From Octopus bimaculoides (lineage: Eukaryota): a stretch of 64,000 nucleotides of DNA. The stretch lies in the NCBI RefSeq assembly GCF_001194135.2, contig NC_068982.1, positions 48,210,538-48,274,537 on the forward strand, written 5' to 3'. The translations under genes were made by a program, and so were the position numbers. The notes under the pieces are model-generated. The model was not told where the DNA came from. It saw only the letters and a program-made list of their open reading frames with translations, and did not search any database. Shown piece by piece: positions 9,492 through 63,714 of the stretch (position 1 is its first letter; every line of letters starts with the position of its first letter).

Positions 9492-9543
9492 CTAGAAGGA
9501 AGAGAGAAAAAAATGTAAGAATTTTAATACTTTAGCAAACTAT

Positions 9544-9580
<37 letters not shown>

Positions 9581-9858: not shown

Positions 9859-9901
<43 letters not shown>

Positions 9902-9903
9902 TA

Positions 9904-11519: not shown

Positions 11520-11815
11520 AGGAGACCTAGACCTCTGGAGATATGCTGTGATTGAGAAGACCCAGCAAATAAAGTGAAATTGCAGCCATAGCTGATGCCA
11601 GTGTTGCATGTCCAGCCCATTTAAAAGTACCCTTGATGCGTTGGGCAATATGATATGCTTGAGAAGACCTGCTGAGTCAAGCAAAGCCAAAATCGTAGCT
11701 GTGGCCAGTGCCCCCTGACTGGCTCCCATTCTGGTGGCATGTAAAATGCACCATCTGAATGTGGTCGATGCCAGGTCTGCCTGACTGGCTCCCATGCATG
11801 ATAAAATAAGTACCA
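11520..11815 (+). mobile_element. RTE 3'-end/UTR fragment
   Basis: gatatgctgtgattgagaagacc..ggtggcatgtaaaatgcacc motifs as in 17309-18117, opposite strand. Confidence 0.65.
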
Positions 11816-12762: not shown

Positions 12763-12991
12763 TTAACCCATTATCATTCAAGCTGGCCACATCTGACCAA
12801 AACATTCTACCTGCTTTATATTCAAACTAACCAAACCTGGCTTCTCACAACAACCCTACAATATCATTCTAAATATTAACTATTAGCTCATCAAAATCTC
12901 AAGGCTATGAGATAATGCATGATTTATTCAAAAACAATGTGAATGAATAAGCATTACTTTTGACAGAATAATCTGAATGCTAAAGGGTTAA
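12763..12991. mobile_element. TTAA-flanked MITE
   Basis: ttaa|cccattatcattc ... gaatgctaaaggg|ttaa. Confidence 0.78.
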
Positions 12992-39798: not shown

Positions 39799-39900
39799 AA
39801 TGAAATTTCCTATCATTCAGGTTATGGATAAATGAATCTTTAACAGTGGAATGAAATTTCCTATCATTCAGGTTATGGATAAATGAATCTTTAACAGTGG
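39799..39900. repeat. Perfect 2 x 51-bp tandem duplication
   Basis: aatgaaatttcctatcattcaggttatggataaatgaatctttaacagtgg twice. Confidence 0.95.
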
Positions 39901-40049
39901 ACATTTATGTATAATTTGCACTAAAACAGGAACACTGTTCTTGAAACACTTTCAGTATAAAAAAAAGTGAGGAAGCTGGACAAAAATTCTGTTTGAAAGA
40001 ACAGCTGTATGATAATCATAATAATTACTAGATTAGCTGAAGGTGGCAA

Positions 40050-40260
40050 GTGGCAGGCAGAATCATTAACATGCCAAGCAGAATGCTTTGAGGCATTTCG
40101 TCCATCTTTATATTCGGAGTTCAAATATTACCAAAGTTGGTTTTACCTTTCATTCTTTCGAAGGTCCATAAAATAAGTTCCAATTGAGTACTGGAGTCGA
40201 TGTAATCAAATATCCCCTCCCCTCAAAATTGCTGGCCTTGTGTCAAAATGAGAAACCAAT
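40050..40260 (+). mobile_element. SINE family B
   Basis: Diverged full copy. Confidence 0.7.
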
Positions 40261-40389
40261 AATTTCTAGATTACTCAGTTCCTTGTCACTGAGGAAATGA
40301 CAAAGGACCGGGAGTTGTGATGATTTGCTGTACTTGAGAGGATGTGTCGTGCTTAATAAAACCACTGTTATCCATACATACAGGCTTAT

Positions 40390-40620
40390 ACTTTACATAT
40401 GTTGGTGCCATATAAAATGCACTCGTGCCAGTGGCATGTGAAAAGCACCCAGCACCTTCTGTAAGGTGGCTGGCATTAGGAAGGGCATCCAGTTATAGAA
40501 ACCATGCCACAGCAGACAATTGGAAACTAAACAGTTCCCAGCTTCATGTCAAACTGTCCAACCCATGCCAGCATGGAAAATTGATGTTAAATGATGATCA
40601 TGATGGTAATGATGATGACT
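40390..40620 (+). mobile_element. RTE 3'-UTR-derived repeat just downstream of PTP exon C
   Basis: ggcattaggaagggcatccag..catggaaaattgatgttaaatgatgat. Confidence 0.72.
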
Positions 40621-40681
40621 TACCAAATATCTTAGCAGCAAGATTTTCCAACCTGCGACAGTTAAGCTAAATGTGTCTTAC

Positions 40682-40841
40682 CTTATATATCAATGCATAC
40701 TGTTGTTTGGTTTGCACAGCCCTTGGTCTTTCAAGTCTCATGGAGTAGACAAAATTAAGAACATCCACGGTTTGTGTTTTATCAAACATCTTCATGCCGG
40801 CATCAATAGCTATCAAAGTTCCCGTACGTCCAGTACCTGAA
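40682..40841 (-). CDS. PTP coding exon C (P-loop and Q-loop): (S)SGTGRTGTLIAIDAGMKMFDKTQTVDVLNFVYSMRLERPRAVQTKQQYALIYK
   Basis: 160 nt = 1 + 53 codons. Acceptor tttctgttttccag|TTCAGG, donor AAG|gtaaga. Completes HCSSGTGRTG (CX5R) and carries R..R...VQT..QY..IY. Confidence 0.96.
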
Positions 40842-41325
40842 CTGGAAAACAGAAAGCAAAACTAATATTCTTTTGAGCATTTTTTTTTTTTTTTGTTTTT
40901 CAGATACAAATTTTCATTAATGTTTTCATGCAAATGAGTATGAGATAGAATTGCATTTTTGTTGGAGTCATTATTTAATACTTTACAGGTGAATACCCTT
41001 CCTACTGTTAAGCACTCAAAAATGATGGAGAAGTAGAACTTGTATTCTTTATCAGATAGGAAAACTAGAGCAAGCAGAATTATGTTCTATGTTCACAACA
41101 CAACAGCAAATAAGATTTGAACTCATAACCATGTAGTCCTTAGTGTAGCACGTTAAACTCACAGCTACTATACCTTTTAGACAATATGATATAAGCTTAT
41201 AAAAAGAAGAAAAACTGAGATCATGGATTCCTTAGAAGAATTGAACTGGCATAGTTTGATTCAAATTTTTCCCAAGCCATAAAAATTCTCCACATATTTA
41301 TAACTAATTTTATCTTTTATCTATT

Positions 41326-41708
41326 ACTTATTTCAGTCATTTGACTATGGCCATGCTGGAGTACTGCCTCGAAAGATTTTAGTCAAACTAATCAACCCCG
41401 GGATTTATTTTTTAAAGCCTAGTACTTATTCTGTCGGCCTATTTTGCTGAACCTCTAGGTTATGGGGACATAAACACACCAAAACTAGTTGTCAAGTGGT
41501 GGTGGGAGACAAACACAGACATAAAGACATATATACACACACACACACATATATATATATATGACAAGCTTCTTTTAGTTTCCATCTATGAAATCCACCC
41601 ACAAGGCTTTGGTTGGTCTGCAGCTAGAGTGGAAGACACTTGCTCAAGGTGCCATGCAGTGAAACTGAACCCTGAACTATGTGGTTGGGAAGCAAACTTA
41701 GTACCACA
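41326..41708 (-). mobile_element. SINE family A
   Basis: Full-length reverse copy. Confidence 0.78.
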
Positions 41709-42214
41709 CAGCCAAACCTGTGCCTGTGTACTAATCTGTATTGCTTTTGTTTTTTCAATAGAATATATAAGCATCATTTCTGAGAAGAAAGCCTCCACAT
41801 TTGCTGTTCACTTTGCATCTAACTTTACACATCACACATTATGCAGGTCTCCTCCAAAAGCTATTACACTCCATCAAATTTGCCATCAAATACAAGTCAC
41901 AAATGAAAGAATCACTAATTACTTCAAACTGACCAGACCACAATCCCAAACAAATTTGTTTTATATTAAGTCTCAAACAATGCATGCTAGATCTAACCCC
42001 TTAATGCTTCAATCTCTGTCTTTACAAAGAAATATTCCAATCTTTGCACACATGCTTCAGTGTATTCAATCTTCTGTCTGCACCAAGGACACAGAATTGA
42101 GTTCTCTCTCTCTGCTTCTCTTTGGAGCCTTAGAACTCATAAGGTGGGTTACCTGGTTTCCCTGCAGTATATATAAGTAAACAAGATCATAACACTACCT
42201 CTACTGAACAGGAT

Positions 42215-42410
42215 ACCAGTCTACTGCAGAGTTAACTCCCCAACTATCTATTTTATTAGAACTCATTTAAAGCTGAGAGAACTGAAGCAAAACATGAAAT
42301 GAAGTGTTCTGCTCAAGAACATAATGCAACGCCCAATGCCAGAGTCAAAACCATGATATTATGATCCTCAGTGCAACACTCTAACTACTAGGGCATGCAC
42401 CTTCACACAA
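42215..42410 (-). mobile_element. SINE family E, 5' part
   Basis: gaagtgttctgctcaagaacataatg..gcatgcaccttc. Confidence 0.62.
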
Positions 42411-42489
42411 AATCGAGTTGCCACCAGTTAATTTCCAACATACTCAGCAAAGCTACTTTATAGACAGTTACCAGGATTCTGTGCTCTTT

Positions 42490-42878
42490 AGAGGTAATAT
42501 TTATCTTCCCACTTACAAGTAGATGTTCTGTTAGAACAAACTATACTGCAGTAGATACCATGAGAGAAACTCTCATATTGGCTTTTGGTGCAAAATGCAC
42601 TATTGTTTACATCACTAGCAGGGAGATAAATCCCTGCCACCTCCAACACAGAGACCATCAGGTCTTAGCCATCGTTGAAGATCAAGCACTTAGCATTGAC
42701 AAAGTCAAGGAAGGTCGAAATCACATGAGGTGGCAAGGATTTATCTCCCTACTGGTAATATATACAAGCATGTAATATGCACCAAAAACCTATTTGAGAG
42801 TTTTTCTTATGGTATCTACTGCAGTATAGTTTGTTCTAATGGAACATCTACATTTAAGTGAGGATAAATATTACCTCT
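42490..42878. mobile_element. MITE-like fold-back, about 150-bp arms and 84-bp spacer
   Basis: agaggtaatatttatc..tccctgccacctc versus gaggtggcaagga..gataaatattacctct. Confidence 0.75.
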
Positions 42879-44532
42879 TGGTGTTAATAGTGCTAATTGC
42901 TAATATACATTTCTGTTACTATCATTATGATTTTGCATTATAGTTATTGCAGTTCCAGATATCAACACTTTAATGTTGTCTGTCACCAGATTCTGGGATG
43001 AACACTAAGCTGGTGTTGAAGCCTAATCAAACAGATCTGTGATAAAATGCTTTTAAGCTATGATGATCTAGTGCTATAGGAATAGAACTACTTTATCTAA
43101 TAGGTGCTTATTTATTAACCTTTCAACTTTAAAATTAAATATCATGGTTATTCCAATAATAATATTAAATATCTACCAAAAATTAGAAATGATATGTTCT
43201 GCAAAGTCATATTGCCTCAATAAACTTGTCATGTCTCACAAAAGAAGAAAAAGGAACAAAACATGACATCCTTCAACAAAAGATAGATTGGTATATAAAA
43301 CTGTATTCTGCAGTTAAGGGCAATCAAATTTTGATTGGATATATTTGATTTCAATAGTAAGCAGGTTAAAATAGTAGGGTATGACTTGAGAGAGATGTTC
43401 CTGATATTTCTAGCAAGCCATGTAATTAAACAGAAACTCTCTTGTTGCATGGAACAGGTTACTCAATGACAAATTTCTCTGAATTGCTCTTGTGAGCTAT
43501 CTGTCAACTCTCAACTTTCTGACTATCTATGGTTGTAGAATCTTTGTTTAGTCAAGATATGCAAAGTAAATTTTATTTGTCCTTGACAATGAACCTTTCT
43601 CAATCAGTGAACAAGAGAGTCTTTACTTTGTTGCTCTTCCTGCTAGAAGTGGAAACCAGATATCCCTTAACTTGTATCCTGTTGTTTTAAAAAGGGAAGA
43701 TACATTGGATAATGTCCCAAATATACATGAACCAGGTCTGTTGGATCAGGGCTAAGCGAGGGTTAAACACTAACAAGTCAAACTACATTTCATTAATCCT
43801 AAACTTGTTTTGTACTGGACTTTGCTATGACATTCTCTACCATGTTCATGACGCCTCATTCTCTAGTGCATATCCATTACAGACATAACAATTAAGATAA
43901 CACTTTCCTGTAAGAAAATTACTTTCTTATATGTATTGTAATTTGTCACCACAGTGTTTTTATTGAAACTGTCAGTTCATCCTTCCATTTCCTTTCTCTA
44001 TGACTGACATTCTTACTTATGATAGTAGTGGCACAACTATCTCTCTCTCTCTCTTTTGCTCTCCTTAATAGTTTAGTCTCTTTCTTTTTTTCTTTTATAC
44101 ATGTATTCATACCTAAGGAGTCATGACTTCTAGTTTGTCTAATGCATTATCCTAAGTGGAAACTCTTCATTATCAGGACATGTTTGATCAACTGAATTCA
44201 ATTTTATTACACAATACAAAGTACTTATCGCTTCCATTATTTATTTGAATCTTGGTTTCCAAGATAATTTCTATGTAAGCAACACCAAGAAAATTCTCTT
44301 CACATCTTCATCATATTTACCATTTATATTTAAGCAATAAGTTAACAGAATCCTTTCCTATTAAACCTGTGATTCAATTCTTTTGTGTGAGGATGAATCT
44401 AACTTTAAACCAAACCTGGCAGAATACCAAACTACTTGAGAATTTCCAAGCATTATGAAAAAGCAAAATAATGATAGATTATAAGTGTTGCTCTTGCCCC
44501 CACCCCATGCTTGTTGAATCTATATTTCTGTG

Positions 44533-44960
44533 TTAACCCTTCAGTACTTAAACTGGCCATATCCAGCCCAAATATTCTACCTGTTTTACATTCAAACTAG
44601 CCTCTCACACCTAACCTGTACTAACATTCTAAAAACAAACAATCACATCAGCAAAACCTCCAAGCTACAAGAAAAAACCATGATTAATTCAAAGCAATTT
44701 GAATAAAAAAAAAAGCATTATATTTAACAAATTAATGTGAGTACTAAAGGGTTAAACTAGCCATATCTGGCTCAAATATTCTGTTTTATGTTCAAACTGG
44801 CTAGATTTGGCCTCTCACACCTATCCTACAATGTCATTCTAAAAATAGACAATCACATCGTTGAAATCTCAAAGCTACAAGATAATGCATGATTAATTCA
44901 ACACAATGTGAATAAATAAATGTTAGTGTCGACAATGTAATCTGAATGCTGAAGGGTTAA
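44533..44960. mobile_element. TTAA-flanked MITE tandem dimer
   Basis: One left end, two bodies, two right ends (gggttaa ending at 44755 and 44960). Confidence 0.78.
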
Positions 44961-45295
44961 ATGCATGATTTTAGACCAGTCTATTCTATGAATAATAAAA
45001 CAACTCAAAACAACTTTCAACAACTTCTGTGTTAGTTTCGAAAGTGATCTGGGAATCATTAATTTTCTCTAATTGATGAAATTTTCACCTTTCTTTTCTT
45101 TTATGATTATACATTTATCATTGTGGAAAATACAGGAACTGGCTAGAATTTGAGCTGTTTATTGAAAACCAACATCTCTTTTGAAATCATTCGATTTCTA
45201 CAGAAAACGATTTTTATTTATTTATTTATTTTTATTCATTTTTGTTTTTTTGTTTCTGATTCTGTTATTGAATACGACAACAAGTTGATGCTCAC

Positions 45296-45441
45296 CTGCA
45301 GTGTACAACTAGAGGGGCTAATTTGTTCTCGTTGTTAAGTCTGACATCAAGGATAAATTTTAAAAATGAAATAGGCTCTGGAAACCCTTGTGCTGGCCAT
45401 GAGGTATACCAATAGTGTTTCAATTTACGGACTAGATTGTT
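45296..45441 (-). CDS. PTP coding exon B (WPD-loop exon, reading WPA): NNLVRKLKHYWYTSWPAQGFPEPISFLKFILDVRLNNENKLAPLVVHC(S)
   Basis: 146 nt = 48 codons + AG. Acceptor ttttttattttacag|AAC, donor TGCAG|gtgagc. Ends in PLVVHC with the phase-2 split inside the HCS serine typical of PTP genes. KHYWYTSWP matches, from memory, the KIM-family PTPs PTPRR/PTPN5/PTPN7. Confidence 0.96.
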
Positions 45442-45767
45442 CTGTAAAATAAAAAAGAAAAAAACAGAAAATATTTACAATGATGCTCCTTTTATGGTTT
45501 TACAAAGATATTTCTTGAACGTTAGCAGAAATAGAGAGGTTTAATACAAACTTGTACATTTGACAATGTCATTGGATATCCCATAATCTCTTACCTCGTA
45601 AATTCTATTCAAAATATTTACATAACAATTGTTGTTATTGGTATATTTGAACTAGTGTCCTCATTTAGGTTGTTATAGCTACAATGTTTCAAAACTGAAC
45701 TCTGTACTAAATCCACAGCAGTTAGATTATTCTTATTTCATTGATCATACCAGGGATTTGTAATACT

Positions 45768-45962
45768 GATTTCAAATTTTGGCACAAGGCCAGTAGTTTC
45801 AAGGATGGTGGTAAGTCAATTACATTGACCCTAGTGCATAGCTGGTACTTATTTTATTGACACTGAAAGGATGAAAGGCAAAGTCAACTTTGGCAGAATT
45901 TGAACTCAGAATGTGGAGATGGATGAAATGTTGCTCGCTGCATTTTGCCAGCTTGCTGCATT
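45768..45962 (-). mobile_element. SINE family B with a 16-bp target-site duplication
   Basis: agggatttgtaatact (45752-45767) and aggaatttgtaacact (45963-45978), 14/16 identical. Confidence 0.8.
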
Positions 45963-46067
45963 AGGAATTTGTAACACTACTTATTCTCCTATTTGTGGTG
46001 CCATCTTCTTGAACCAGTGAATATATGACTATCATGTAATGTCAAGACAAAAACAAAAACACAAAAT

Positions 46068-46112
<45 letters not shown>

Positions 46113-46174
46113 CACACACGTATTTGATTTAATGAATAGGAATGGCTCTTAACATTTTTTTTTCCACTTCAATA

Positions 46175-46810
46175 ATTGAATGTATATAAATCTTTAAGTG
46201 TTTACTAAGGGCTTCTTTTAGTTTCCATTTACTCACAAGCCTTTGGCTAGTCTGGGGCAATTGAAAAAGACACTTACTTAAGGTGCCACACAATGGATCT
46301 GAACCCACAACCATGTGGTTGGGAAGCAAGCTTCTTAATGCACATAGCTGCATCCAAACCTCAAAGTCATAGTGTTGTTTTCTTTTCTTTTACTTGTTTT
46401 TGTCATTAGACTGTGGCCATACTGGGGCACTGCCTTGGAGAATTTTTAGTTGAATGAATTAACACCCTAATGCTTATATTTTTTTAAAGCCTGATATTAT
46501 ACTCTATCGGTGTCTTTTGCTGAACTGCTAAGTTAAAGGGACATAACCATATCAACACCAGCTGCCAAGTGGTGGTGGGCAAGCACAAACAGAAATACAC
46601 ACAGGCATATATCTATCTACACTCACACACACACACACACATTACGATGAGCTTCTTTCAGTTTCTGTCTACCAATCCACTTACGAGGCTTTGGTCAACC
46701 TGTGGTGTAGTAGAAGACACCACTTGCTCATGGTGCCATGCAGTGGGACTGAACCCAGATCCATGTGGATGGAAAGCAAACTTTTTACCACACAGTCATG
46801 CCCGCACCTG
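46175..46810 (-). mobile_element. Two adjacent SINE family A copies (5' half plus full length)
   Basis: About 46175-46350 and 46380-46810. Confidence 0.75.
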
Positions 46811-47339
46811 TTAAAAGAAATTTAGAAGGAACCAGAAATCTATTTTGCTTTGCTTAGAATTTAATTGAATGTATTCTGATTGTAGCAGGTGAAAACGTTT
46901 CCATTGGTTCAAAAAGATAATTTTGAACATAGTTTCATTTAAACTAATGGAGACTTTTGTTACAGAGGTTTATTGCGCACATTCCATTTTGTACTCATTG
47001 TTTCAATACATGTTCTTTATACTAACAATGTAATTCAAAGATACCTCAAAGTCACTCGATTCAAACAGACATGCCTCATTGCAACTAGAATTGGAATGAT
47101 GGCCCTTTTGAACATGTTTAAAGCTTAATTAAACTGAAGTTTTGCTGTCTTACCAAACAGCAAGTAATTTATGTTGAGTTTGTATTGAATGACAATGCAG
47201 TGAATGCACTTTGCTTCAAGTTGACTGATTACACATTTGTTAGCTAACAGTCGTTAGCTTATCTTAATGTATTGCAAAGGTAGCAAAGAATGCATAGTGA
47301 GAATATTAGCTGATGATATTCTTCATTTACTTCTTTTAC

Positions 47340-47530
47340 TTTTCCTTTTTATTTGTTAGTCATTGGATTGTGGCCATGCTGGGGCACTACCTTGATGGGT
47401 TTCAGCCAAACAAATCAATCCCAGTACTTAAGTCTGGTACTTATTCTATCGATCTCTTTTACCGAACCAATAATTTACAGGGATGTAAATAAACCAACAC
47501 TGATTGTCAAGCAGTGATGAGGGACAAACA
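47340..47530 (-). mobile_element. SINE family A, 3' half
   Basis: gtcattggattgtggccatgctggggcac..acactgattgtcaagcag. Confidence 0.7.
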
Positions 47531-47714
47531 GAAATATCACACACACTAGCTCAACGAGCTAGGTTTCTGTGACAAATCTGTGAAACTTTAAGCTACATGG
47601 AAGCAAATCAAACTGTTTTAAATAATATATGTAATTCATACTACGAGTGTTGAGTACCCTTCATTTGTCCACTCACTCATATATATATATATATATATAT
47701 GTATATACTGCCAC

Positions 47715-47964
47715 GCCAGTGATATGCTGTACTTGAGAAGACCTGTCAAGCCAAATAAAATTGTAGTTGTGGCTGATACCTGTATCATCTGACTAGCATG
47801 TAAAAAGCACCCGCTACACTCTTGGAGTGTTTGGCATTAGGAAGGGCAACTAGCTGTAGAAACCATGCCAAATCAAACTGGAACCTTGTGCAGCTCCCAA
47901 GCTTACCAGTTTTCAGTCAAACCGTCCATCCAATGCCAGCATGGAAAACGGGCGTATAATGATG

Positions 47965-48010
<46 letters not shown>

Positions 48011-48370
48011 CTGTGAAGAGAACCTGTGGGAGAGGCAAACTCAGAAAAACGTAGGATGAGGTGGTGAAATATGATCTTTAGATGTTGAGCTGCATGGAGG
48101 TGATGACAAGTGACCGGCAGTTTGCTGTGCTTGAGAAGGCACATCAAGCCAAGTGAAATCATTGTTGTAACCAGTGCCAGTGACATGTAAAAAGCACTCA
48201 TGCTGGTGATATGTAAAAGACACCCAATACACTCAGTGGAGCAATTAGCATCAGGAAGGGCATCCAGCCATAGAAATCAAGCCAAAACAGACTGGACCCT
48301 GGTGCAACTATCCGGCTTACCAGCTCTGTCAGCATGGAAGACACACTAACTGATGATGATGATGATGATA
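47715..48370 (+). mobile_element. Two successive RTE 3'-end fragments (about 47715-47965 and 48075-48370) separated by (TG)n
   Basis: Both carry gctgt.cttgagaag, ggaagggca and a (GAT)n tail. Confidence 0.7.
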
Positions 48371-48387
48371 TATATACATATATATAT

Positions 48388-48600
48388 GAGGGTGCATGGC
48401 TTAGTGGTTAGGGTGTTGCACTCACAGTCTGGTGATCATCATTTCAATTCTAAGAGCTGCATTGTGTTCTTGAGCAAAACTCTTCATCCCATGTTGCTCT
48501 GTAATCACTTCGACACCTGATGCATGGTATACTGTCCCCCTGTTTGGGCAGCATCAATTTGATGGAGGGAGTGAGATAATGGTACAGTATAAACATTTGA
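48388..48600 (+). mobile_element. SINE family E head with a different 3' part
   Basis: gagggtgcatggcttagtggttagggtg..tgtgttcttgagcaaaac. Confidence 0.65.
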
Positions 48601-48676
48601 TCACTATAAAGAAATTATTTGTGCAGGTCAATTGGCAAAAGCTGAACACTCACTCACCGTCTTCAACAGGGAGAGT

Positions 48677-48741
<65 letters not shown>

Positions 48742-48894
48742 CAGGCTTCTACACAATTTCCATCTGCCAAATTTACTCGTATGGCATTGGTTGACCTGGG
48801 GCTTTAGCAGAAGACACTTGGTCAAATGGTTGGGAAGTAAATTTCTTAACCCCACACCAATACATGTGACCAATGTGGATATAGAGACTGGTTT

Positions 48895-49095
48895 CAAATT
48901 CTGGCACAAGGCCAGCTATTCCAGGGAATGGAATAAGTGAATTACATCGACCTCAGGTGCTCAACTGGTACTTATTTTATCAACTCGTAAAGATGAAAAG
49001 CAAAGTTAACTTCAAATGAATTTGAACTCAGACAGTAAAGACAGACGAATTACCTGTAAGCATTTTGCCCAGCATGCTAACAATTCTACCAGCTG
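48895..49095 (-). mobile_element. SINE family B
   Basis: Reverse copy. Confidence 0.72.
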
Positions 49096-49097
49096 TT

Positions 49098-49455
49098 TTG
49101 ACAACTGGTGTTAATATGTTTATGTCCCTTTAACTTAGCAGTTCAGCAAAAGACACCGATAGAGTAAATATCAGGCTTAAAAAAATATAAGCATTGGGGT
49201 GTTAATTCATTCAACTAAAAATTCTCCAAGGCAGTGCCCCAGTATGGCCACAGTCTAATGATAGAAACAAGTAAAAGAAAAGAAAACAACACTATGGCTT
49301 TGAGATGTGGATGCAGCTATGTGCATTAAGAAGCTTGCTTCCCAACCACATGGTTGTGGGTTCAGACCCACTGTGTGGCACCTTAAGCAAGTATCTTTTT
49401 CAATTGCCCCAGACTAACCAAAGGCTTGTGAGCAAATGGAAACTAAAAGAAGCCC
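49098..49455 (+). mobile_element. SINE family A 3' half plus 5' half (inverted duplicate of the 46139-46568 region)
   Basis: See the inverted duplication finding. Confidence 0.75.
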
Positions 49456-49909
49456 ATAGTAAACACTTAAAGATTTATATACATTCAATTATTGAAGTAG
49501 AAAAAATGTTAAGAAAAGCCATTCCATAGTGTAGATATAGATATTAAAAATATTTTATCTCAGTTAATAGTCAAAATTATAATCTTATTTTCTACCATAC
49601 TTTTACAAATCTGAGAGCATGAGATTGTTTTTGACTCAATCATGCTCAGAAACATATATTCCTGTAACATAAAACTGCTCCAGATGGCATGTGGCTAATG
49701 CTTATCTATAATAACATTATTTGAAATTGGTGGAGTTAGAGAAGCTCTGCCTTAATTGAAGATTATTGATTTAAAAATCTGAAAAAAATAGTACATATTT
49801 CCAACAACAAGTGTTTGAAATATTAGTTACAGCTGAGGAGTACAAGAACATCTGTTTCTGTCACAGTTTACATTACACAAATGGTAAATCCATCAGATCT
49901 CATACATCC

Positions 49910-49925
49910 ATTATATATATATGTA

Positions 49926-49973
<48 letters not shown>

Positions 49974-49989
49974 NNNNNNNNNNTACATA

Positions 49990-50023
<34 letters not shown>

Positions 50024-50805
50024 CACACACACATACATACATATGTATACATACACATATATATATGTATACATACATATATATGTACATATATACATAT
50101 ATATATATGTATATGTATGTACACATATATATATGTATATGTATGTACATATATATATATGTATATGTATGTACATATATATATANNNNNNNNNNNNNNN
50201 NNNNNNNNNNNNNNNNNNNNNNNNNNNNNNNNNNNNNNNNNNNNNNNNNNNNNNNNNNNNNNNNNNNNNNNNNNNNNNNNNNNNNNNNNNNNNNNNNNNN
50301 NNNNNNNNNNNNNNNNNNNNNNNNNNNNNNNNNNNNNNNNNNNNNNNNNNNNNNNNNNNNNNNNNNNNNNNNNNNNNNNNNNNNNNNNNNNNNNNNNNNN
50401 NNNNNNNNNNNNNNNNNNNNNNNNNNNNNNNNNNNNNNNNNNNNNNNNNNNNNNNNNNNNNNNNNNNNNNNNNNNNNNNNNNNNNNNNNNNNNNNNNNNN
50501 NNNNNNNNNNNNNNNNNNNNNNNNNNNNNNNNNNNNNNNNNNNNNNNNNNNNNNNNNNNNNNNNNNNNNNNNNNNNNNNNNNNNNNNNNNNNNNNNNNNN
50601 NNNNNNNNNNNNNNNNNNNNNNNNNNNNNNNNNNNNNNNNNNNNNNNNNNNNNNNNNNNNNNNNNNNNNNNNNNNNNNNNNNNNNNNNNNNNNNNNNNNN
50701 NNNNNNNNNNNNNNNNNNNNNNNNNNNNNNNNNNNNNNNNNNNNNNNNNNNNNNNNNNNNNNNNNNNNNNNNNNNNNNNNNNNNNNNNNNNNNNNNNNNN
50801 NNNNN
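49910..50805. repeat. (TG)n plus compound (TA/CA/TATG)n microsatellite running into the largest N gap (50186-50805)
   Basis: Seen directly. Other gaps at about 2981, 4336, 9590, 19806, 23981, 28915, 32959, 35730 and 54411. Confidence 0.9.
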
Positions 50806-51368
50806 CACACATACAATTTCACTAAAATTTTTCTCCTATCATGCCTACATTAATCTTGTGATTTTTCTGTGGTTTAGAAGTATTTTGACTTTTATTTTTA
50901 GTGAAGCAGGTGCTTATGTAGTACCCTAGTATATTTAAATATATTTATTTATATATTTTATATATAAATTATTAATTTGTCAATACGGTTGTGTGCTTTA
51001 GACCACCAACAACATTATTTTTAGAAATAATATTGTTCTTATATTTATTTACAAATAATTTTACGCAATTCATTTGTTTCAATGGTGGTTGACCACTCAA
51101 ATGAATTTACAGGCATGGTAGTGGTGAATCTTAGTAGCCATCCCAGCAGATTTGACTGGGGAGATTCAGGCGCTTTTGATGCTAGATTCAAAATCATGAT
51201 ATCAAATTAGCCAGCATTACTTTTGCATCCTTGGCGGAGGTAGAACACTATTCTTGTTCACCAAACATTTTTTCCTATCATGCCTGCATTAATTTTGTGG
51301 TCTTCTGTGGTTTAGAAGTATATATTCTGTGGTTTAGAAGTCTGGATGTCTATTTATTTATAGGTCAT

Positions 51369-51400
<32 letters not shown>

Positions 51401-52395
51401 GTACATATATATGACCTATAAATAAATACTACACGTAGAAATTAAATTTGGAATTGTTCAGACTGCTCACATTGGTGACAAATATATACACAGTGACATA
51501 ACAATGGGGAATGCAAAACTCCACTACCAACATTATATTATATTACAATTACTTCAGTGAAGGAAATTAAAAAAATATTAAAACTGGAAAGAAAAAAAAA
51601 AACAAAAAAAAATTGACCTGGAAATTTTGAAGAATCAAGATAATTCTACATGAAATAGCCAAATATTGTCCGAATACGAACTCCATATTTCACTATAATA
51701 GTACATTGTTAAATAAAAAAATAATCATAATTGTAATAAAATATTATAATGATAATATATATATGCACACATATATATTTACACACACATATAGGTACAT
51801 GTATATATACACACACACATATATACCCATACATATCTACATGCATACATATATGGAGGTGTACACTCAAACATATGCATACATGTACATGTAAACTCAG
51901 AGTATGTAATACTCCTACACCCATTAAACAATATACATAGAAGTATGTGTATATAGAAGTATCGACATCCAGACATAAATATGTATATAAACAAGAACAT
52001 ATACATATACACACATGTGCATACATGCTCATCCAAATGCACATAGTTATCATGGTTACAGGCATGCAAATGTGTATGTGTGCATGTATATGTAATGTCT
52101 CTGTGTGTGTGTACACACATACATGTGTGTGTGTGTTGAATTATTGAAACCTTTAGTATTATATTACATTTAATTATCTGTAGTAATATCAGTAGTAATT
52201 ACAGCAGTTGTTCCATAAGCGATAGTAGTAGTAGTTGTTAATAACAGATAGAGTAAATAAAGTTGAAATATTGTTATTGCTGTATAAAGAAATGTGAGGT
52301 TAAAATTTTCTGTCAGAATTTAGTAAATTGAATCAGTATTCTAAGATCGGAATTTCAGACTTCTGTGAAGCATCAGAATTGCAGTAAACCATTAA

Positions 52396-52623
52396 TTAAC
52401 CCTTTAGCATTTAAACTGGCCATATTCGGCCAAAATTTTCCATCTGTTTTATGTTCAAACTGACCAGATCCAGTCTCTGACACCCACTTTACAATGTTAT
52501 TCTAAAAATAAACAGTCACATCATTGAAATCTCAAAGCTACATGATAATGTATGATTAATTCAAACAAATGTGAATAATTAAACCTTATATTTCACAGAG
52601 TAATCTGAATGTGAAACGGTTAA
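52396..52623. mobile_element. TTAA-flanked MITE
   Basis: ttaa|ccctttagcatttaaactggcc ... tctgaatgtgaaacgg|ttaa. Confidence 0.78.
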
Positions 52624-54039
52624 TACATTAGCTCTGCATTTGCGCTCAAATTTTCCATGAAGGTTTTATTCCCAAAGGTGAAATGTATAAAATAAAGAAA
52701 TCTGTATTGCAGAGATAGCTGGGAGTTACATATACAGTAAATCTATTTGATGTGAGTTGCTCTTTATTTCGTAATCGGAATTTGAAATGCAGTTAGTTTG
52801 TCTTCATATGAGGTCTTTTGTTTCAAGAATTTAGGATTAGAATCCTAGTTCCATCATTAAAGGAAAGGTTTTGTAGCTATATTAGTAGTTCATGCAGCTA
52901 AGTAACATTTTTAAGTTCAACAGTATCAAGTCATAAAAAAAAGTGCTACTCAACTGATTTTTATGAAATTACTTATTAACATACTCCAAACTCTGACTCA
53001 CAGATGTACTATTTCCTCTCTGCCTTTTATACTCTTTACTGATAATGCAGTGTTCTTTGGTCCTCAGAGCTGAACAGTCTCATGCTACCTCCATTCAGGT
53101 ACTCCTATACATTTGTCTTTTTATTTTTCACTCATTGCTGATATCATGGCGCCTCTCTTCCCATACTAATTACTATATCCAGTTCCTTCTTCTTGGAACT
53201 CGACCCTATTAAATTCTGTCTCTGCCCATCTGTCTTAGGAACAACTCAGAAGTAATTAACTGCATCGAAATCAAAACTATCCAGATTTTAGTCTGGAACT
53301 GCCTGCAAAAGCCATGAGTATAGCCCCCCCATTCTTCCAGACAAAAATAAAACTATAAAAAATGTAATAATGAAAAGCATATTCTAAAAGCAACTTAGTT
53401 ATGTCATGCTAGCTACTTTCTCACTTCTAGTCACTTGTGTTTTTACTCCATAAGCTAATAAAATAAATACTTGGTGTTTACTTCGATGGATGGACAACTC
53501 CTACTCACCCCTACTAAACTATTCCTCTCAGTCAAGATAAATAATTATTATAACTGTTGCATAGAGCTAATTATAGCCTTTCTGCATTCCATCACATTTT
53601 GATCTTATCTTATCAACCCTGAAAGATGAAAGGCACAGTTGACCTAGCATGTTAACAATTCTGCCAGCTTGCTGCCTTCATATAAGTTATAATAATGAAG
53701 TCAAACCAAATAGTTATATTTTGACATCATTTAATATGTGTTTCATGTCTGTGTAATATATAAGAAATGCATCTGAAAGGTCTTACATAATAGATGTATT
53801 TTCTGTTATATGTTACACAGATCTGAGACATGTATTAAATGAGTTCAAAATATCACTATCTGGTTTGAATTCATTGTTACAACTAATATGACTCGATGCC
53901 AGTACAAACAAATCAGCCCAGACTCCACTTATGAGGATACTCTTACAAAGATTTGGAGAAGTTTGGTATATTTAACTTGAGTCAAAAATTCTGGTACCAT
54001 GCACTGCTTAGTGTGGCACAAAACATATCTATATATCTC

Positions 54040-54395
54040 TTTCACTCTTTTATTTGTTTCAGTCATTTGACTGTAGCCATGCTGGAGCATTGCCTTAGAG
54101 GGTTTTAGTCGAAGAAATCAATCCCAGGGCTTATACTTTGTAAGCCTAGTACTTATTCTATTGATCTCTTTTGCTGAACTGCTAGATTAGGGGACATAAA
54201 CACACTGATATCAGTTTGTCAAGTGGTAGTGTGGAAGAGACTTGCCCAAGGTGCCTGCGGTGGGACTGAGCCCAGACCCATGTGGTTGGGAAGCAAGTGG
54301 GAAGACTAACACAGACACACACACATAAATACATACATACATATATGTAGGCTCGAAACGTAAAAGACTTTCTCACTGAGCCATGCGCCTTCACA
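54040..54395 (-). mobile_element. SINE family A, internally rearranged
   Basis: Head segment (54235-54300) is placed before the cacacacac middle segment. Confidence 0.68.
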
Positions 54396-54764
54396 TATGT
54401 ATGTATATATNNNNNNNNNNNNNNNNNNNNNNNNNNNNNNNNNNNNNNNNNNNNNNNNNNNNNNNNNNNNNNNNNNNNNNNNNNNNNNNNNNNNNNNNNN
54501 NNNNNNNNNNNNNNNNNNNNNNNNNNNNNNNNNNNNNNNNNNNNNNNNNNNNNNNNNNNNNNNNNNNNNNNNNNNNNNNNNNNNNNNNNNNNNNNNNNNN
54601 NNNNNNNATATATATATATATATATATATAATGGTATTTTTATATAAGCTTAAAGCTTATGGCTATCACCATACAATGACTAAGGAAAATAGTCTAATAA
54701 AGGGACGTAGAAACCCTTGACAGAAAAAGAAGTCTTTCCTATCCACATCATGATCATCATCATC

Positions 54765-54900
54765 ACCATCATGATCATCATGATCATCATTTAAAGTCTG
54801 CTTTTCATGCTAGCATGGTTTAACTGGAACTGGTAAACCAGAGAGCTGCATCAGGTTCCAGTCTGATTTGGCATAGTTTCTACAGCTGGATGACCTTCCC
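54765..54900 (-). mobile_element. RTE 3'-UTR-derived fragment
   Basis: catcatttaaagtctgcttttcatgctagc..ctacagctggatgaccttccc. Confidence 0.65.
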
Positions 54901-55419
54901 ACTAGCATAGCTAGCGTGTGTCCCACTTGGGGTTATCCTTCTATTTGTCGCCCCCAGACCCCACAAAAAACACATATTGTCTACAGCAAACCCCCAAAGT
55001 GGTGCCCCCTTAACCCTTTTGTTACTGGATTTATTTTGAGCTGTTCTGTATTTCTTTCAATTACTTAAAATATTAAATATAACAAATAATTTAGTAAAAT
55101 CACTTCGTTATCATTAAGCTAGTGTTAGGTACATAAATAGTGATCGGAACATAAAATGACTAAGGTTTGGTGGAAGATTTTAATTTAAAACTTATGAAAA
55201 CAAAACATTTGTAGCCAGAGCCAGTTTCAGCCGGGTTGGTAACGAAAGGGTTAAAAGTGCTGTCGAGGGTGGACTTCCCCCCACCAACCTCCCACACTTC
55301 TAGCTACACTAGTGGCCCTCCCTAACACCATCTACTCCAAGAGTGTAACAGGTGCTTTTTACATAACACCGGTAATGACTGCAATTTCATAAGTGTTGTT
55401 TACATGATACTGGTAACAC

Positions 55420-55732
55420 CTTGTAGAATTTTAGTTGAACTAATTGACCCAGTGCTTATTTTCTTTTTAAGCCTGGTATTTCTGCTGAGTTCTGGGGATG
55501 TAAACACCAACACTGGTTGTCAAGCAGTGGTGGAGGACAAACACAAACACACACACACACGTATATGCAAGTCTTCTTTCAGTTTCTGTCGATCAAATCC
55601 ATTCATAAGACTTTGATCAACCCGAGGCTATATAGCAGAAGACACTTGCCCAAGGTGCCACACGGTGGGACTGAACCTGGAACTGAAAGGTTGGGAAGCA
55701 AACTTCTTACCACACAGCCACACCTGCACCTA
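55420..55732 (-). mobile_element. SINE family A starting about 24 bp downstream of the exon A donor
   Basis: cttaccacacagccacacctgcacc is the head in reverse. Confidence 0.78.
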
Positions 55733-55755
55733 TAACAAAAACATAACATACTTAC

Positions 55756-55893
55756 TTCCATGTCTTTAAGTTCTAAGTTAGATACAATATATTCTGGTTT
55801 AAAATCTTTTTTCCTAAGAATGACTTGGTGGTCACCGTACAGTCTAACGCTGGAGACATCTTCTGCATCTGGACAATACGGGGTTCCTTTGGG
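55756..55893 (-). CDS. Classical protein tyrosine phosphatase, coding exon A (most 5' exon found): PKGTPYCPDAEDVSSVRLYGDHQVILRKKDFKPEYIVSNLELKDME
   Basis: 138 nt = 46 codons. Minus-strand acceptor ttttttttataattctag|CCC, donor GAA|gtaagt, phase 0/0. Sits where the KCxxYWP...YG.I.V...Y.IR.L.L exon lies in classical PTPs and joins exon B in frame (DME|NNLVRKLKHYWY). Confidence 0.9.

Positions 55894-59354: not shown

Positions 59355-59403
<49 letters not shown>

Positions 59404-61453: not shown

Positions 61454-61488
<35 letters not shown>

Positions 61489-63680: not shown

Positions 63681-63714
<34 letters not shown>

What the first reader, a model, noticed from the sequence alone, without database searches (positions are those of the whole stretch)
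45296..45441. Natural substrate-trap PTP: general-acid WPD loop reads WPA while the catalytic Cys and Arg are intact
Seen: the exon encodes HYWYTSW-P-A-Q-G-F-P (Ala codon GCA at 45393-45391), and the spliced P-loop is HCSSGTGRTG with both Q-loop Gln (VQTKQQ). Established: the WPD Asp (PTP1B D181) is the general acid, and D181A is the standard substrate-trapping mutant, which binds pTyr substrates with greatly reduced turnover. WPA occurs naturally in the pseudophosphatase IA-2/PTPRN, but IA-2 has an HCSDG P-loop, whereas this protein has HCSSG and a KHYWYTSWP motif like the KIM-family MAPK phosphatases PTPRR/PTPN5/PTPN7. GCA differs from GAT/GAC at two positions, so a single base-call error is unlikely, and A-to-I editing cannot restore Asp. 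Inference: this is a pTyr-binding pseudophosphatase, possibly anchoring or shielding phospho-MAPK or another substrate. Clean splice sites and 177 stop-free codons across 46 kb argue against a pseudogene.
Basis: partly seen in the sequence, partly recalled or inferred. Interest (0 to 1): 0.8.

Follow-up and report, generated by a model that had tools for sequence, protein, structure and literature searches.

The report
Acid-less receptor tyrosine phosphatase of cephalopods
The window holds the last four exons of a real, strongly conserved cephalopod receptor tyrosine-phosphatase gene. Like its whole invertebrate family, it has lost the catalytic acid and the standard active-site alanine, so it most likely signals by binding partners rather than by removing phosphate.

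Summary
Minus-strand exon 45441-45296 encodes KHYWYTSWP-A-QGFP, with the Ala codon GCA at 45393-45391. It splices to HCSSGTGRTG and VQTKQQY.

Four exons with clean splice sites give 177 codons plus a stop. These match residues 908-1084 of a 1084-aa Argonauta hians protein (173 of 177 residues identical). That protein has a mucin-like ectodomain, one transmembrane helix and a single C-terminal PTP domain, so this is not a D2 domain.

It is not a pseudogene. dN/dS against a cuttlefish/squid-type transcript is 0.04, and the Ala codon differs synonymously (GCA versus GCC).

It is not IA-2. There is no IA-2 ectodomain, the P-loop is not HCSDG, and IA-2 grouping gets 0% bootstrap.

It belongs to an uncharacterised bilaterian family (molluscs, arthropods, a hemichordate) that groups beside the KIM-type phosphatases PTPRR/STEP. 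Across 88 members the general-acid position is among the most variable sites (A, E, V, S, T, D and others), while Cys, Arg and the flanking W, P and G are invariant.

In HD-PTP that change alone abolishes activity.

The likely function is a catalytically impaired docking or scaffold phosphatase. A tight "substrate trap" is unproven. Interest is moderate.

The parts
55756..55893 (-). Coding exon (138 nt, phase 0): PKGTPYCPDAEDVSSVRLYGDHQVILRKKDFKPEYIVSNLELKDME. It is the first exon of this gene inside the window. It carries a degenerate form of PTP motif KCxxYWP, here KGTPYCP.
   Evidence: tblastn with relatives and with P0031. Sequence and splice sites. Decapodiform cDNA L004 3413-3550 aligns here.
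45296..45441 (-). Coding exon (146 nt) holding the WPD-loop region KHYWYTSWPAQGFP and the start of the P-loop, VVHC plus the first two bases of the Cys+2 Ser codon. This is the exon named in the finding.
   Evidence: cDNA L004 3550-3697 aligns. P0031 residues 953-1001 align.
45391..45393 (-). GCA, the Ala codon at the general-acid position (equivalent to PTP1B D181).
   Evidence: Direct reading. The decapodiform orthologue has GCC at the same codon.
45298..45300 (-). TGC, the catalytic Cys codon (equivalent to PTP1B C215).
   Evidence: Direct reading. The position is invariant in 88 family members.
40682..40841 (-). Coding exon (160 nt): (S)SGTGRTGTLIAIDAGMKMFDKTQTVDVLNFVYSMRLERPRAVQTKQQYALIYK. 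It holds the rest of the P-loop (Arg codon CGT at 40828-40826) and the Q-loop (Gln codons at 40714-40712 and 40702-40700). The Cys+2 Ser codon is split AG|T across the intron.
   Evidence: cDNA L004 3692-3858 aligns. P0031 998-1055 aligns.
9402..9491 (-). Terminal coding exon: ALLEYATMVMSPSISSTSSRTTGNAVTYT plus stop TAG (9404-9402). The protein ends 29 residues after the PTP domain, so no second domain follows.
   Evidence: Acceptor scan and sequence. It matches P0031 1056-1084 and the C-terminus of P0033.
45442..55755 (-). Intron of 10.3 kb. It contains N-gaps and SINE-like repeats.
40842..45295 (-). Intron of 4.45 kb that splits the P-loop. This intron is absent in the insect relatives L001-L003.
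9492..40681 (-). Intron of 31.2 kb before the terminal exon. It contains transposon fragments and gaps.

Best explanation
What it is (shown). The window carries the 3' end (last four coding exons, residues 908-1084) of the coleoid cephalopod orthologue of an old, uncharacterised bilaterian receptor-type protein tyrosine phosphatase. The full protein has a signal peptide, a long Ser/Thr-rich mucin-like ectodomain, a small ferredoxin-like membrane-proximal domain, one transmembrane helix, a disordered juxtamembrane segment and a single C-terminal classical PTP domain. The family is distinct from IA-2. It groups beside the KIM-type (R7) phosphatases PTPRR and STEP. Insects also have the canonical PTP-ER, so this is a separate lineage rather than simply 'the' R7 orthologue.

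How it probably works (inferred). The PTP domain folds normally and keeps the nucleophile Cys, the P-loop Arg, the KNRY/DYINA phosphotyrosine-recognition residues, both Q-loop Gln and the WPD-loop hinge residues (W, P, G, P). It has lost the general acid (Ala in cephalopods, almost any residue elsewhere). It has also lost the canonical Cys+2 Ala (Ser in cephalopods, Pro in most relatives).

By analogy with D181A in PTP1B and Ser1394 in HD-PTP, ordinary phosphotyrosine turnover should be very low. Strong purifying selection then points to a non-catalytic or weakly catalytic role. The likeliest role is membrane-anchored docking of partners through the juxtamembrane KIM-like motif: [RK][RK]x[ST]..S[LM] in cephalopods, RRCxPVSLDAYSLD in arthropods. 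An active-site pocket that still recognises phosphorylated ligands may contribute. This resembles catalytically dead PTP-SL, which still retains ERK2 outside the nucleus.

Whether the pocket binds pTyr tightly (a true 'trap') is open.
For: Gene model and orthology:
- Exons, splice sites and the 177-codon ORF.
- 98% identity to Argonauta hians GAB1610532.1 residues 908-1084.
- Only one Y_phosphatase domain and no IA-2 domain in the full-length orthologues.

Functional constraint:
- dN/dS is 0.038 over 177 codons against decapodiform transcript L004 (dN 0.094, dS saturated).
- The Ala codon is GCA versus GCC.
- The cDNA is contiguous across the junctions.
- WPA, HCSSG and KGTPYCP are identical in all 16 cephalopod sequences that cover the region.

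Family breadth: molluscs, crustaceans, insects, myriapod, chelicerates and Saccoglossus.

Active-site statistics:
- General-acid position in 109 sequences: A39 E17 V16 S10 T7 D6 and others. Cys+2: P85 S18 A3 T3.
- In 88 non-redundant sequences the acid position has 3.07 bits of entropy, more variable than 94% of positions. H-C-S-x-G-T-G-R and the flanking W, P and G are invariant or nearly so.

Affinity to R7:
- The family profile scores PTPRR (272), PTPN5 (270) and PTPN7 (269) above every other single-domain PDB chain. IA-2 is not in the top 60.
- NJ bootstrap: family 100%, family plus PTPRR/STEP 98%, family plus IA-2 0%.
- The 9-mer KHYWYTSWP is shared with PTPRR.

Structure: the AF2 model has a canonical PTP fold for residues 50-336, with the juxtamembrane segment and tail disordered. 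Foldseek top hits are classical PTP domains, including PTPRR at TMt 0.88.

Literature:
- Ser at Cys+2 inactivates HD-PTP and S1394A restores activity (PMC2661844).
- The KIM contains an RRGS PKA site, and ERK2 retention by PTP-SL needs neither catalysis nor the PTP domain (PMC2168101).
- The HePTP KIM sequence is given in PMC3782045.
- Juxtamembrane motifs are listed.
Against: - No enzymology or binding data exist for any family member that I could find.
- Invariance of the nucleophile Cys, the Arg and (mostly) both Gln is more than pure phospho-ligand binding would need. It could mean that some chemistry persists.
- The Cys+2 Ser or Pro might weaken phosphate binding, which argues against the 'trap' part.
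- The KIM likeness rests on a short motif in a disordered region. It is weaker in molluscs than in arthropods.
- R7 affinity rests on an NJ tree with limited sampling (no PTP-ER, few non-receptor PTPs) and on a margin of only 5-8 bits in the PDB profile ranking.
- The N-terminal 907 residues, including the motif, lie outside the window. They are inferred from the Argonauta hians orthologue.
Confidence: 0.6

Rival explanations
1. True natural substrate trap. The domain binds phosphotyrosine substrates such as the phospho-MAPK activation loop with high affinity and negligible turnover. It thereby shields or anchors them, as an engineered D181A mutant does.
For: The general acid is absent, while Cys, Arg, KNRY, DYINA, the Q-loop and the WPD-loop hinge are conserved. 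The family shows R7/KIM-like affinity and a KIM-like motif. It is under strong purifying selection.
Against: Cys+2 is Ser (Pro in 85 of 109 relatives). In HD-PTP, Ser here abolishes activity and is modelled as unfavourable for bound pTyr (PMC2661844). Pro has no backbone NH, so it cannot donate the P-loop hydrogen bond to phosphate (established chemistry). The acid position and its neighbour are hypervariable, which suggests that this face of the closed loop is not under selection for ligand contact. No binding data exist.
Confidence: 0.2
2. The domain is still an enzyme, but with non-canonical chemistry or substrate. It could hydrolyse substrates whose leaving group needs no general acid. It could act on phosphoinositides, as IA-2beta and PTPRQ are reported to do. 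The Cys could also serve as a redox sensor.
For: H-C-S-x-G-T-G-R is invariant, and the Q-loop Gln are kept in 74 of 88 and 86 of 87 sequences across more than 500 My. That is more than a pure binding module requires. Glu or Asp is still present at the acid position in 23 of 109 members, and some bivalves and Saccoglossus have Asp one residue later. The review PMC10815196 notes weak inositol-phospholipid activity for IA-2beta.
Against: The acid position varies freely even between close relatives, so no alternative acid is fixed. Pro or Ser at Cys+2 is expected to damage phosphate binding. No candidate substrate is known.
Confidence: 0.17
3. It is the cephalopod IA-2 (PTPRN) orthologue, or the inactive D2 domain of a tandem receptor PTP.
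For: WPA also occurs in IA-2. I first noticed an IA-2-like 'MLTxLxENGVEKC' stretch in relatives. The membrane-proximal ectodomain model has weak similarity to the IA-2 and phogrin ectodomain folds (TM 0.34-0.52, E 0.16-0.37).
Against: Full-length orthologues have a single PTP domain and no Receptor_IA-2 or RESP18 domain. The P-loop is HCSSG or HCSPG, not HCSDG. IA-2 is absent from the top 60 PDB hits in three searches. Bootstrap support for the family with IA-2 is 0%. The protein ends 29 residues after the domain, and nothing PTP-like lies upstream in the orthologue.
Confidence: 0.02
4. It is a pseudogene, an assembly error or a base-calling error.
For: The window has 11 N-gaps. The motif KCxxYWP is degenerate (KGTPYCP).
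Against: The 177-codon ORF is intact with canonical splice sites. dN/dS is 0.038. The same WPA, HCSSG and KGTPYCP occur in Argonauta hians and in 15 decapodiform sequences, including full-length transcripts. The Ala codon differs synonymously between lineages.
Confidence: 0.01

Closest known systems
R7 / KIM-type tyrosine phosphatases (PTPRR/PTP-SL, PTPN5/STEP, PTPN7/HePTP; Drosophila PTP-ER)
   Same: Both have a single PTP domain at the extreme C-terminus and a type I receptor form with a glycosylated ectodomain (PTPRR). The H-x-W-[YF]-T-x-W-P signature is shared, with KHYWYTSWP identical to PTPRR. These are the best profile matches among single-domain PDB chains, and the family groups with PTPRR and STEP in the NJ tree. 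Both have a basic-hydrophobic juxtamembrane motif with an RRx[ST]-type site resembling the KIM.
   Different: R7 enzymes have WPD[HQ]KTP and HCSAGIGRTG and are active MAPK tyrosine phosphatases. This protein has WPA and HCSSG. The ectodomain here is a very long mucin-like region plus a ferredoxin-like domain. The motif is not a canonical 16-residue KIM. Insects carry PTP-ER as well, so this is a separate lineage that appears to be missing from vertebrates.
IA-2 / PTPRN (R8)
   Same: Both are receptor-type with a single C-terminal PTP domain. Both have Ala at the general-acid position (WPA) and a non-Ala residue at Cys+2. IA-2 is regarded as a pseudophosphatase.
   Different: IA-2 has HCSDG, a changed Q-loop (VRSKDQF), and RESP18 and Receptor_IA-2 ectodomains. 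There is no phylogenetic affinity (0% bootstrap), and IA-2 scores lower than more than 60 other PDB PTP chains. IA-2beta reads WYD, not WPA.
HD-PTP / PTPN23
   Same: Both have the HCSSG P-loop (Ser at Cys+2) together with a non-Asp general-acid position. HD-PTP is experimentally inactive, and S-to-A restores its activity.
   Different: HD-PTP is cytosolic, with Bro1, V and His domains, and reads WPE. It is unrelated in architecture and phylogeny.
Engineered substrate-trapping mutants (PTP1B D181A)
   Same: Both have Ala in place of the general acid, with Cys and Arg retained.
   Different: The engineered trap keeps the canonical HCSAG P-loop. This natural protein does not, so tight pTyr binding cannot be assumed.
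PTPRU D1 and RPTP D2 pseudophosphatase domains
   Same: All are classical PTP folds that keep the Cys but lack full catalytic machinery and act non-catalytically.
   Different: Those are parts of tandem-domain receptors. Here the sole PTP domain of the protein is the impaired one.

Membership tests
Classical (Cys-based, class I) protein tyrosine phosphatase domain | Pfam Y_phosphatase (PF00102) match and the PTP fold | tested here: met
   PF00102 scores 237 bits over residues 826-1059 of orthologue P0031. The AF2 model matches PTP domains in Foldseek at E about 1e-26 and TMt 0.83-0.89.
Classical (Cys-based, class I) protein tyrosine phosphatase domain | Signature HCxxGxxR(S/T)G with nucleophile Cys and Arg | tested here: met
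   HCSSGTGRTG, spliced across exons 2 and 3.
Catalytically competent classical PTP | General-acid Asp in WPD | tested here: not met
   WPA, with GCA at 45393-45391. Asp is present in only 6 of 109 family members.
Catalytically competent classical PTP | Ala at Cys+2 (VHCSAG) | tested here: not met
   Ser in cephalopods and Pro in 85 of 109 relatives. The functional importance of this residue is shown in PMC2661844.
Catalytically competent classical PTP | Measured phosphatase activity | not testable with these tools
   Needs recombinant protein assays.
R7 / KIM-type PTPs | Single PTP domain at the C-terminus, with a receptor or membrane-associated form | tested here: met
   P0031 and P0033 have one transmembrane helix and one PTP domain. 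The protein ends 29 residues after the domain.
R7 / KIM-type PTPs | 16-residue kinase interaction motif (LQERRGSNVxLxLD) N-terminal to the PTP domain | tested here: inconclusive
   Only KIM-like motifs are present: SRKISLGSLDSIAL in cephalopods and RRCTPVSLDAYSLD in arthropods, both in a disordered segment. No binding test was possible.
R7 / KIM-type PTPs | Phylogenetic grouping with PTPRR, PTPN5 and PTPN7 | tested here: inconclusive
   NJ bootstrap is 98% with PTPRR and STEP, but outgroup sampling is limited and PTP-ER is missing. The PDB profile ranking puts R7 first by only 5-8 bits.
R7 / KIM-type PTPs | WPD[HQ]KTP loop and HCSAGIGRTG | tested here: not met
   WPAQGFP and HCSSGTGRTG here, against PTPRR and STEP.
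IA-2 / PTPRN (R8) | HCSDGAGRTG P-loop | tested here: not met
   HCSSGTGRTG here, against 2I1Y and 2QEP.
IA-2 / PTPRN (R8) | Receptor_IA-2 or RESP18 ectodomain | tested here: not met
   No such Pfam hit in P0031, P0033, P0034, P0036 or P0038. The ectodomain fold resemblance to 2QT7 and 4HTI is not significant.
IA-2 / PTPRN (R8) | Phylogenetic grouping with IA-2 and IA-2beta | tested here: not met
   0 of 300 bootstraps. IA-2 is not among the best 60 PDB matches.
D2 domain of a tandem receptor PTP | A membrane-proximal D1 PTP domain upstream in the same protein | tested here: not met
   There is a single PF00102 hit in the 1084-aa and 1110-aa orthologues. The transmembrane helix lies about 120 residues before the domain.
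Processed or decayed pseudogene | Frame disruptions, relaxed dN/dS, no transcripts | tested here: not met
   The ORF is intact, dN/dS is 0.038, and relatives have full-length transcript contigs.

The most novel reading that the evidence does not exclude
The gene represents a bilaterian-wide, vertebrate-lost sister family of the KIM phosphatases: transmembrane mucin-PTP fusions. In this family the nucleophile Cys, the Arg and the Q-loop have stayed invariant for more than 500 My, while the general-acid position drifts freely and the P-loop carries Pro or Ser. That pattern would mean the domain performs a conserved, acid-independent chemistry, or thiol/redox sensing, on an unknown ligand. It would not be a dead scaffold or a simple pTyr trap.
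Probability: 0.15. Interest if true: 0.7.

Novelty: new member of a known kind. Interest (0 to 1): 0.4.

Why it matters
Pseudophosphatases are recognised signalling regulators. The well-studied classical-PTP examples (IA-2, HD-PTP, PTPRU, D2 domains) are vertebrate-centred.

This finding points to a whole uncharacterised receptor family in molluscs, arthropods and a hemichordate. Automatic annotation labels its members 'mucin', 'MSB2-like', 'PTPN7-like' or 'PTP zeta/delta-like'. The family pairs a mucin-type ectodomain with an R7-like PTP domain that has lost both the general acid and the P-loop Ala, yet is under strong constraint.

If it docks MAP kinases, it would be a membrane-tethered, non-catalytic counterpart of PTPRR/PTP-ER. 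It would also give a tractable natural experiment on what a PTP active site is kept for once turnover is gone. For cephalopod biology specifically it is an ordinary conserved gene, not a lineage-specific innovation.

Tried and rejected
1. The first word-indexed protein search with the 102-aa peptide gave only 9 fragmentary hits on gene-called eukaryotic contigs. It missed the full-length orthologues. The index seems to favour short proteins.
2. PTP1B and PTPRA tblastn found only two exons. The upstream exon needed the insect relatives as queries.
3. I searched 55894-64000 for further upstream PTP exons by motif and with P0031. None is present, so the rest of the gene lies beyond the window.
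4. I considered an IA-2 hypothesis, prompted by WPA and a 'LxENGVEKC' resemblance. Pfam, PDB ranking and the tree rejected it.
5. P0164 looked IA-2-like (HCSDGAGRTG), but it is the D2 of a tandem receptor PTP.
6. The D2 hypothesis was rejected.
7. The Foldseek search of the ectodomain model gave no significant hit. It shows only a weak ferredoxin, SEA or MAD-like resemblance.
8. Foldseek of the PTP model does not discriminate between subtypes.
9. Literature searches for Ptp36E, which from memory may be the Drosophila member, and for the P-loop strings found nothing informative. I could not establish which D. melanogaster gene is the orthologue. NCBI calls the D. tropicalis member 'PTPN7-like'.
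11. tRNA and Rfam scans of the window were empty.
Full report
**Observation**

On the minus strand, an exon bounded by ttttacag| and |gtgagc (45441-45296) translates in one frame to NNLVRKLKHYWYTSWPAQGFPEPISFLKFILDVRLNNENKLAPLVVHC. The Ala codon is GCA at 45393-45391, the 17th codon of the exon. The last two bases, AG, join the T at 40841 of the next exon (40841-40682). This gives Ser and then SGTGRTG...RPRAVQTKQQYALIYK. The spliced P-loop is therefore HCSSGTGRTG, and both Q-loop glutamines are present.

One upstream exon (55893-55756) encodes PKGTPYCP...LELKDME. A terminal exon (9491-9402) encodes ALLEYATMVMSPSISSTSSRTTGNAVTYT plus a stop. Together the four exons give 534 nt, that is 177 codons plus TAG, over 46.5 kb. 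All acceptors have polypyrimidine tracts and AG, and all donors are GTRAG. Every factual statement in the finding checks out.

**Is it a real gene?**

An exhaustive HMMER search of 1.84 billion representative proteins found P0031. This is a 1084-aa protein of Argonauta hians (GAB1610532.1), annotated 'signaling mucin MSB2-like'. It is 98% identical to the window over the 148 residues searched, at its residues 908-1055. The terminal exon matches its last 29 residues, and the whole 177 residues differ at 4 positions. The window therefore comes from an argonaut or a very close relative and holds only the last four coding exons. Nothing else of the gene lies between 55894 and 64000.

A second representative, P0033 (1110 aa), belongs to a cluster that includes a Sepia pharaonis entry. 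It is carried on many 3-6 kb Logan contigs. One of these, L004 (5878 nt, SRR31864754), holds the uninterrupted 1110-codon ORF with flanks on both sides, so it is an assembled transcript. Its cDNA aligns to the first three window exons contiguously at exactly the predicted junctions. The protein continues without a break into the terminal exon.

Over the 177 shared codons dN is 0.094. dS is saturated at 2.46, so the ratio of 0.038 is approximate. The Ala codon is GCA in the window and GCC in the decapodiform, a synonymous difference. All 16 cephalopod sequences that cover the region read WYTSWPA[QH]GFP, HCSSGTGRTG, KGTPYCP and VQTKQQY. Pseudogene, sequencing error and lineage-private mutation are excluded.

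**Architecture**

Pfam finds one Y_phosphatase domain near the C-terminus of the full-length orthologues. It finds nothing else: no second PTP domain, no Receptor_IA-2, no RESP18.

The sequences show a signal peptide, hundreds of Ser/Thr/Pro-rich residues, and a conserved block of about 120 residues with two invariant Cys. One hydrophobic helix follows, then a juxtamembrane segment of about 120 residues, and then the PTP domain.

AlphaFold2 models the conserved ectodomain block confidently (pLDDT 88.7) as a beta-alpha-beta repeat, ferredoxin-like domain. Foldseek finds no significant PDB neighbour. It gives only weak resemblance to membrane-adjacent domains: PCDH15 MAD12, and the phogrin and IA-2 mature ectodomains at TM 0.34-0.52. 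I treat this as inconclusive.

The cytoplasmic model has a canonical PTP fold for residues 50-336, with the juxtamembrane segment and the tail disordered. The protein is a single-domain receptor PTP, not a D2 domain.

**Family**

The same architecture and signature, H-x-W-[YF]-x-x-W-P-x-x-G-x-P ... HCS[PSAT]GTGRTG ... VQTKEQY, with the protein ending 64-77 residues after the P-loop, recurs in:
- bivalves (Pecten, Potamilus, Mytilus, Mactra);
- gastropods (Patella, Lymnaea);
- crustaceans (Homarus, Procambarus, Portunus);
- insects (Cephus, Ischnura, Menopon, Lycorma, Psylliodes, Gryllus, Apis, Drosophila tropicalis);
- a collembolan, a millipede, Limulus, spiders and a sea spider;
- the hemichordate Saccoglossus.

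Source names are arbitrary: 'mucin-17-like', 'serine-rich adhesin', 'PTPN7-like', 'RPTP zeta', 'RPTP delta-like'. The metagenome-derived fragments found first resemble the hymenopteran members, and they lack the intron that splits the P-loop in cephalopods.

**State of the active site across the family**

In 109 sequences the general-acid position reads A39, E17, V16, S10, T7, D6, H3, P3, I3, N2, K, M, Y. Cys+2 reads P85, S18, A3, T3. TQGP is TQAP in 94. The Trp of KCxxYWP survives in only 13.

In 88 non-redundant domains the acid position has 3.07 bits of entropy, more variable than 94% of aligned positions. Meanwhile:
- the flanking W, P and G, and H-C-S-x-G-T-G-R, are invariant or nearly so;
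- KNRY, YINA and the second Q-loop Gln are nearly invariant;
- the first Q-loop Gln is kept in 74 of 88.

Most of the observed residues (A, V, E, N, H, Y) are single-nucleotide neighbours of Asp codons. This fits an ancestral Asp released from constraint, which is my inference. The cephalopod WPA is thus one state of a family-wide loss, not a cephalopod invention.

**Which known subtype?**

*IA-2.* I retrieved the IA-2 and IA-2beta domain sequences from PDB (2I1Y, 2QEP). IA-2 reads SWPAEG, HCSDGAGRTG and VRSKDQF. IA-2beta reads SWYDRG. IA-2 never appears among the best 60 PDB matches to the window peptide, to a relative's full domain, to the cephalopod cytoplasmic region or to the family profile.

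*R7.* The family profile scores the three R7 (KIM-type) enzymes highest among single-domain chains: PTPRR 272.5, PTPN5 270.4 and PTPN7 269.1 bits. PTPN9 (264.9), PTPRK (264.0) and PTPRE D1 (263.1) follow. The margin is small.

*Tree.* I built a neighbour-joining tree on 282 trimmed columns with 36 domains. It included 20 family members, PTPRR, STEP, IA-2, IA-2beta, PTP1B, and the D1 and D2 domains of several tandem RPTPs. Results from 300 bootstraps:
- family monophyly, 100%;
- family plus PTPRR/STEP, 98%;
- family plus IA-2, 0%.

Sampling is limited: it has no PTP-ER and few non-receptor PTPs. I therefore call the R7 affinity probable, not established.

*Shared signature.* PTPRR reads VKHYWYTSWPDHKTP (also P0055). 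It shares the 9-mer KHYWYTSWP with the window. The Trp four residues before WP is invariant in the family and is found in PTPRR and STEP. Apart from one unclassified two-domain hit (P0037), the non-family domains listed have Phe, Tyr or Leu there.

*Separate lineage.* The mosquito PTP-ER orthologue has WPDHRSP and HCSAGIGRTG (PMC4138107). Insects therefore have both a canonical R7-type enzyme and this family. The family is a separate, probably sister, lineage that I did not find in vertebrates.

**Juxtamembrane motif**

The KIM of HePTP is RLQERRGSNVALMLDV (PMC3782045). Its RRGS is a PKA site that switches MAPK binding off (PMC2168101).

Arthropod members carry a conserved Y-G-[RQ]-R-C-x-P-V-S-L-D-A-Y-S-L-D-S-V directly after the membrane. 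This matches RRx[ST]xVSL of the KIM. Molluscs keep S-[LIM]-[DN]-S-[IV]-A-L preceded by a basic Rxx[ST] or RKxS site. In Argonauta this reads SRKISLGSLDSIALG. The segment is predicted to be disordered, as expected for a docking motif. The resemblance is suggestive only, and it lies outside the window.

**Mechanism**

It is established knowledge that the WPD Asp protonates the tyrosyl leaving group, and that D181A in PTP1B lowers turnover by orders of magnitude while retaining substrate binding. That is the basis of substrate trapping.

In HD-PTP the same HCSSG sequence is responsible for inactivity. S1394A restores activity, whereas restoring the acid (E to D) alone does not. The Ser is modelled as unfavourable for bound phosphotyrosine (PMC2661844). 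Most family members have Pro there. Pro cannot donate the backbone NH that this P-loop position normally offers to phosphate (inference from chemistry).

The domain therefore carries two independent catalytic lesions, so very low pTyr turnover is likely. Tight pTyr binding is not assured.

The PTP domain is nevertheless under strong purifying selection. PTP-SL retains ERK2 outside the nucleus without needing catalysis or even its PTP domain (PMC2168101). I therefore favour a membrane-anchored docking or scaffold role through the juxtamembrane motif, possibly helped by a pocket that still recognises phospho-ligands.

The invariance of Cys, Arg and Gln leaves room for residual or non-canonical chemistry, or for redox sensing. 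I keep that as a rival.

**Novelty and verdict**

The gene is in public databases, but only under misleading automatic names. I found no paper describing the family or its acid-less active site. Searches for the P-loop strings, Ptp36E and pseudophosphatase reviews returned nothing informative. The literature library is incomplete, and I could not identify the D. melanogaster orthologue.

Mechanistically this is another classical-PTP pseudoenzyme or low-activity enzyme of the kind represented by IA-2, HD-PTP, PTPRU and D2 domains.

The finding is real, correctly read and biologically meaningful. It is a family trait rather than a cephalopod oddity, and the 'substrate trap' label goes beyond the evidence. 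Interest is moderate.

Noticed in passing
window 58101-58400 and at least 13 further places (e.g. 59238-59363, 31284-31417, 41499-41672, 46619-46757, 18159-18300, 55541-55677): A SINE-like repeat of about 130-170 bp occurs at least 14 times in both orientations at 72-89% identity. It translates in part to ...SQGFGWPEA..EDTCP.CHAVGLNPE.CGW. One copy sits in the intron just downstream of exon 55893-55756.
   Followed up: partly
window 18144-17845 (-): A stop-free 100-aa segment reads ...RRLRWYGHVARMDEDS...GRGRPKKTWDEVVKDDLRKLGL...DRVLWK. From memory this resembles the C-terminal tail of LINE-type retrotransposon ORF2 proteins common in invertebrate genomes. It lies inside the 31-kb intron.
   Followed up: no
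window 38797-39126 (+): A stop-free 110-aa segment (...ISECLSVNLRTMQRIWKELEESNGN...) resembles the helix-turn-helix N-terminus of a DNA transposase. It is probably a transposon fragment in the intron.
   Followed up: no
window 2981-54607 (11 runs of N, 1947 bases); microsatellites around 49.8-50.9 kb, 28.2-28.7 kb and 51.7-52.2 kb: Assembly gaps and long (CA)n or (TATG)-type simple repeats produce spurious long ORFs. There are no tRNA genes and no Rfam family at gathering score anywhere in the window.
   Followed up: yes
window 45296-45297 / 40841: The Cys+2 Ser codon of the P-loop is split AG|T by a 4.45-kb intron. In the insect relatives (L001-L003) the WPD loop, P-loop and Q-loop lie in one exon, so this intron position differs between phyla.
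   Followed up: partly
window 55872-55892 (KGTPYCP): PTP motif KCxxYWP is degenerate in coleoids: the Cys is Gly and the Trp is Cys. In the family as a whole the Trp is replaced by L, I, F or C in most members, while bivalves, gastropods and Saccoglossus keep YWP.
   Followed up: partly
orthologue P0031 (Argonauta hians GAB1610532.1), residues about 575-705; alignment A2: A conserved membrane-proximal ectodomain of about 120 residues has two invariant Cys. It is modelled confidently (pLDDT 88.7) as a ferredoxin-like fold but has no significant PDB neighbour. The public name 'signaling mucin MSB2-like' hides the fact that the protein is a receptor tyrosine phosphatase.
   Followed up: partly
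arthropod family members (e.g. P0038, P0061, P0079, P0111): Their C-termini end in L-[ED]-S-[FMLI], which looks like a class III PDZ-binding motif. Cephalopods end in ...NAVTYT(W) and bivalves in ...H-x-M-L.
   Followed up: no
PDB 2QEP (IA-2beta): IA-2beta reads SWYDRG, not WPA, at the WPD position. Of the two human R8 proteins, only IA-2 carries WPA.
   Followed up: yes
P0055: A database protein fuses a PTPRR-like partial domain to a second classical PTP domain. This is probably a gene-model merge of two adjacent genes.
   Followed up: no
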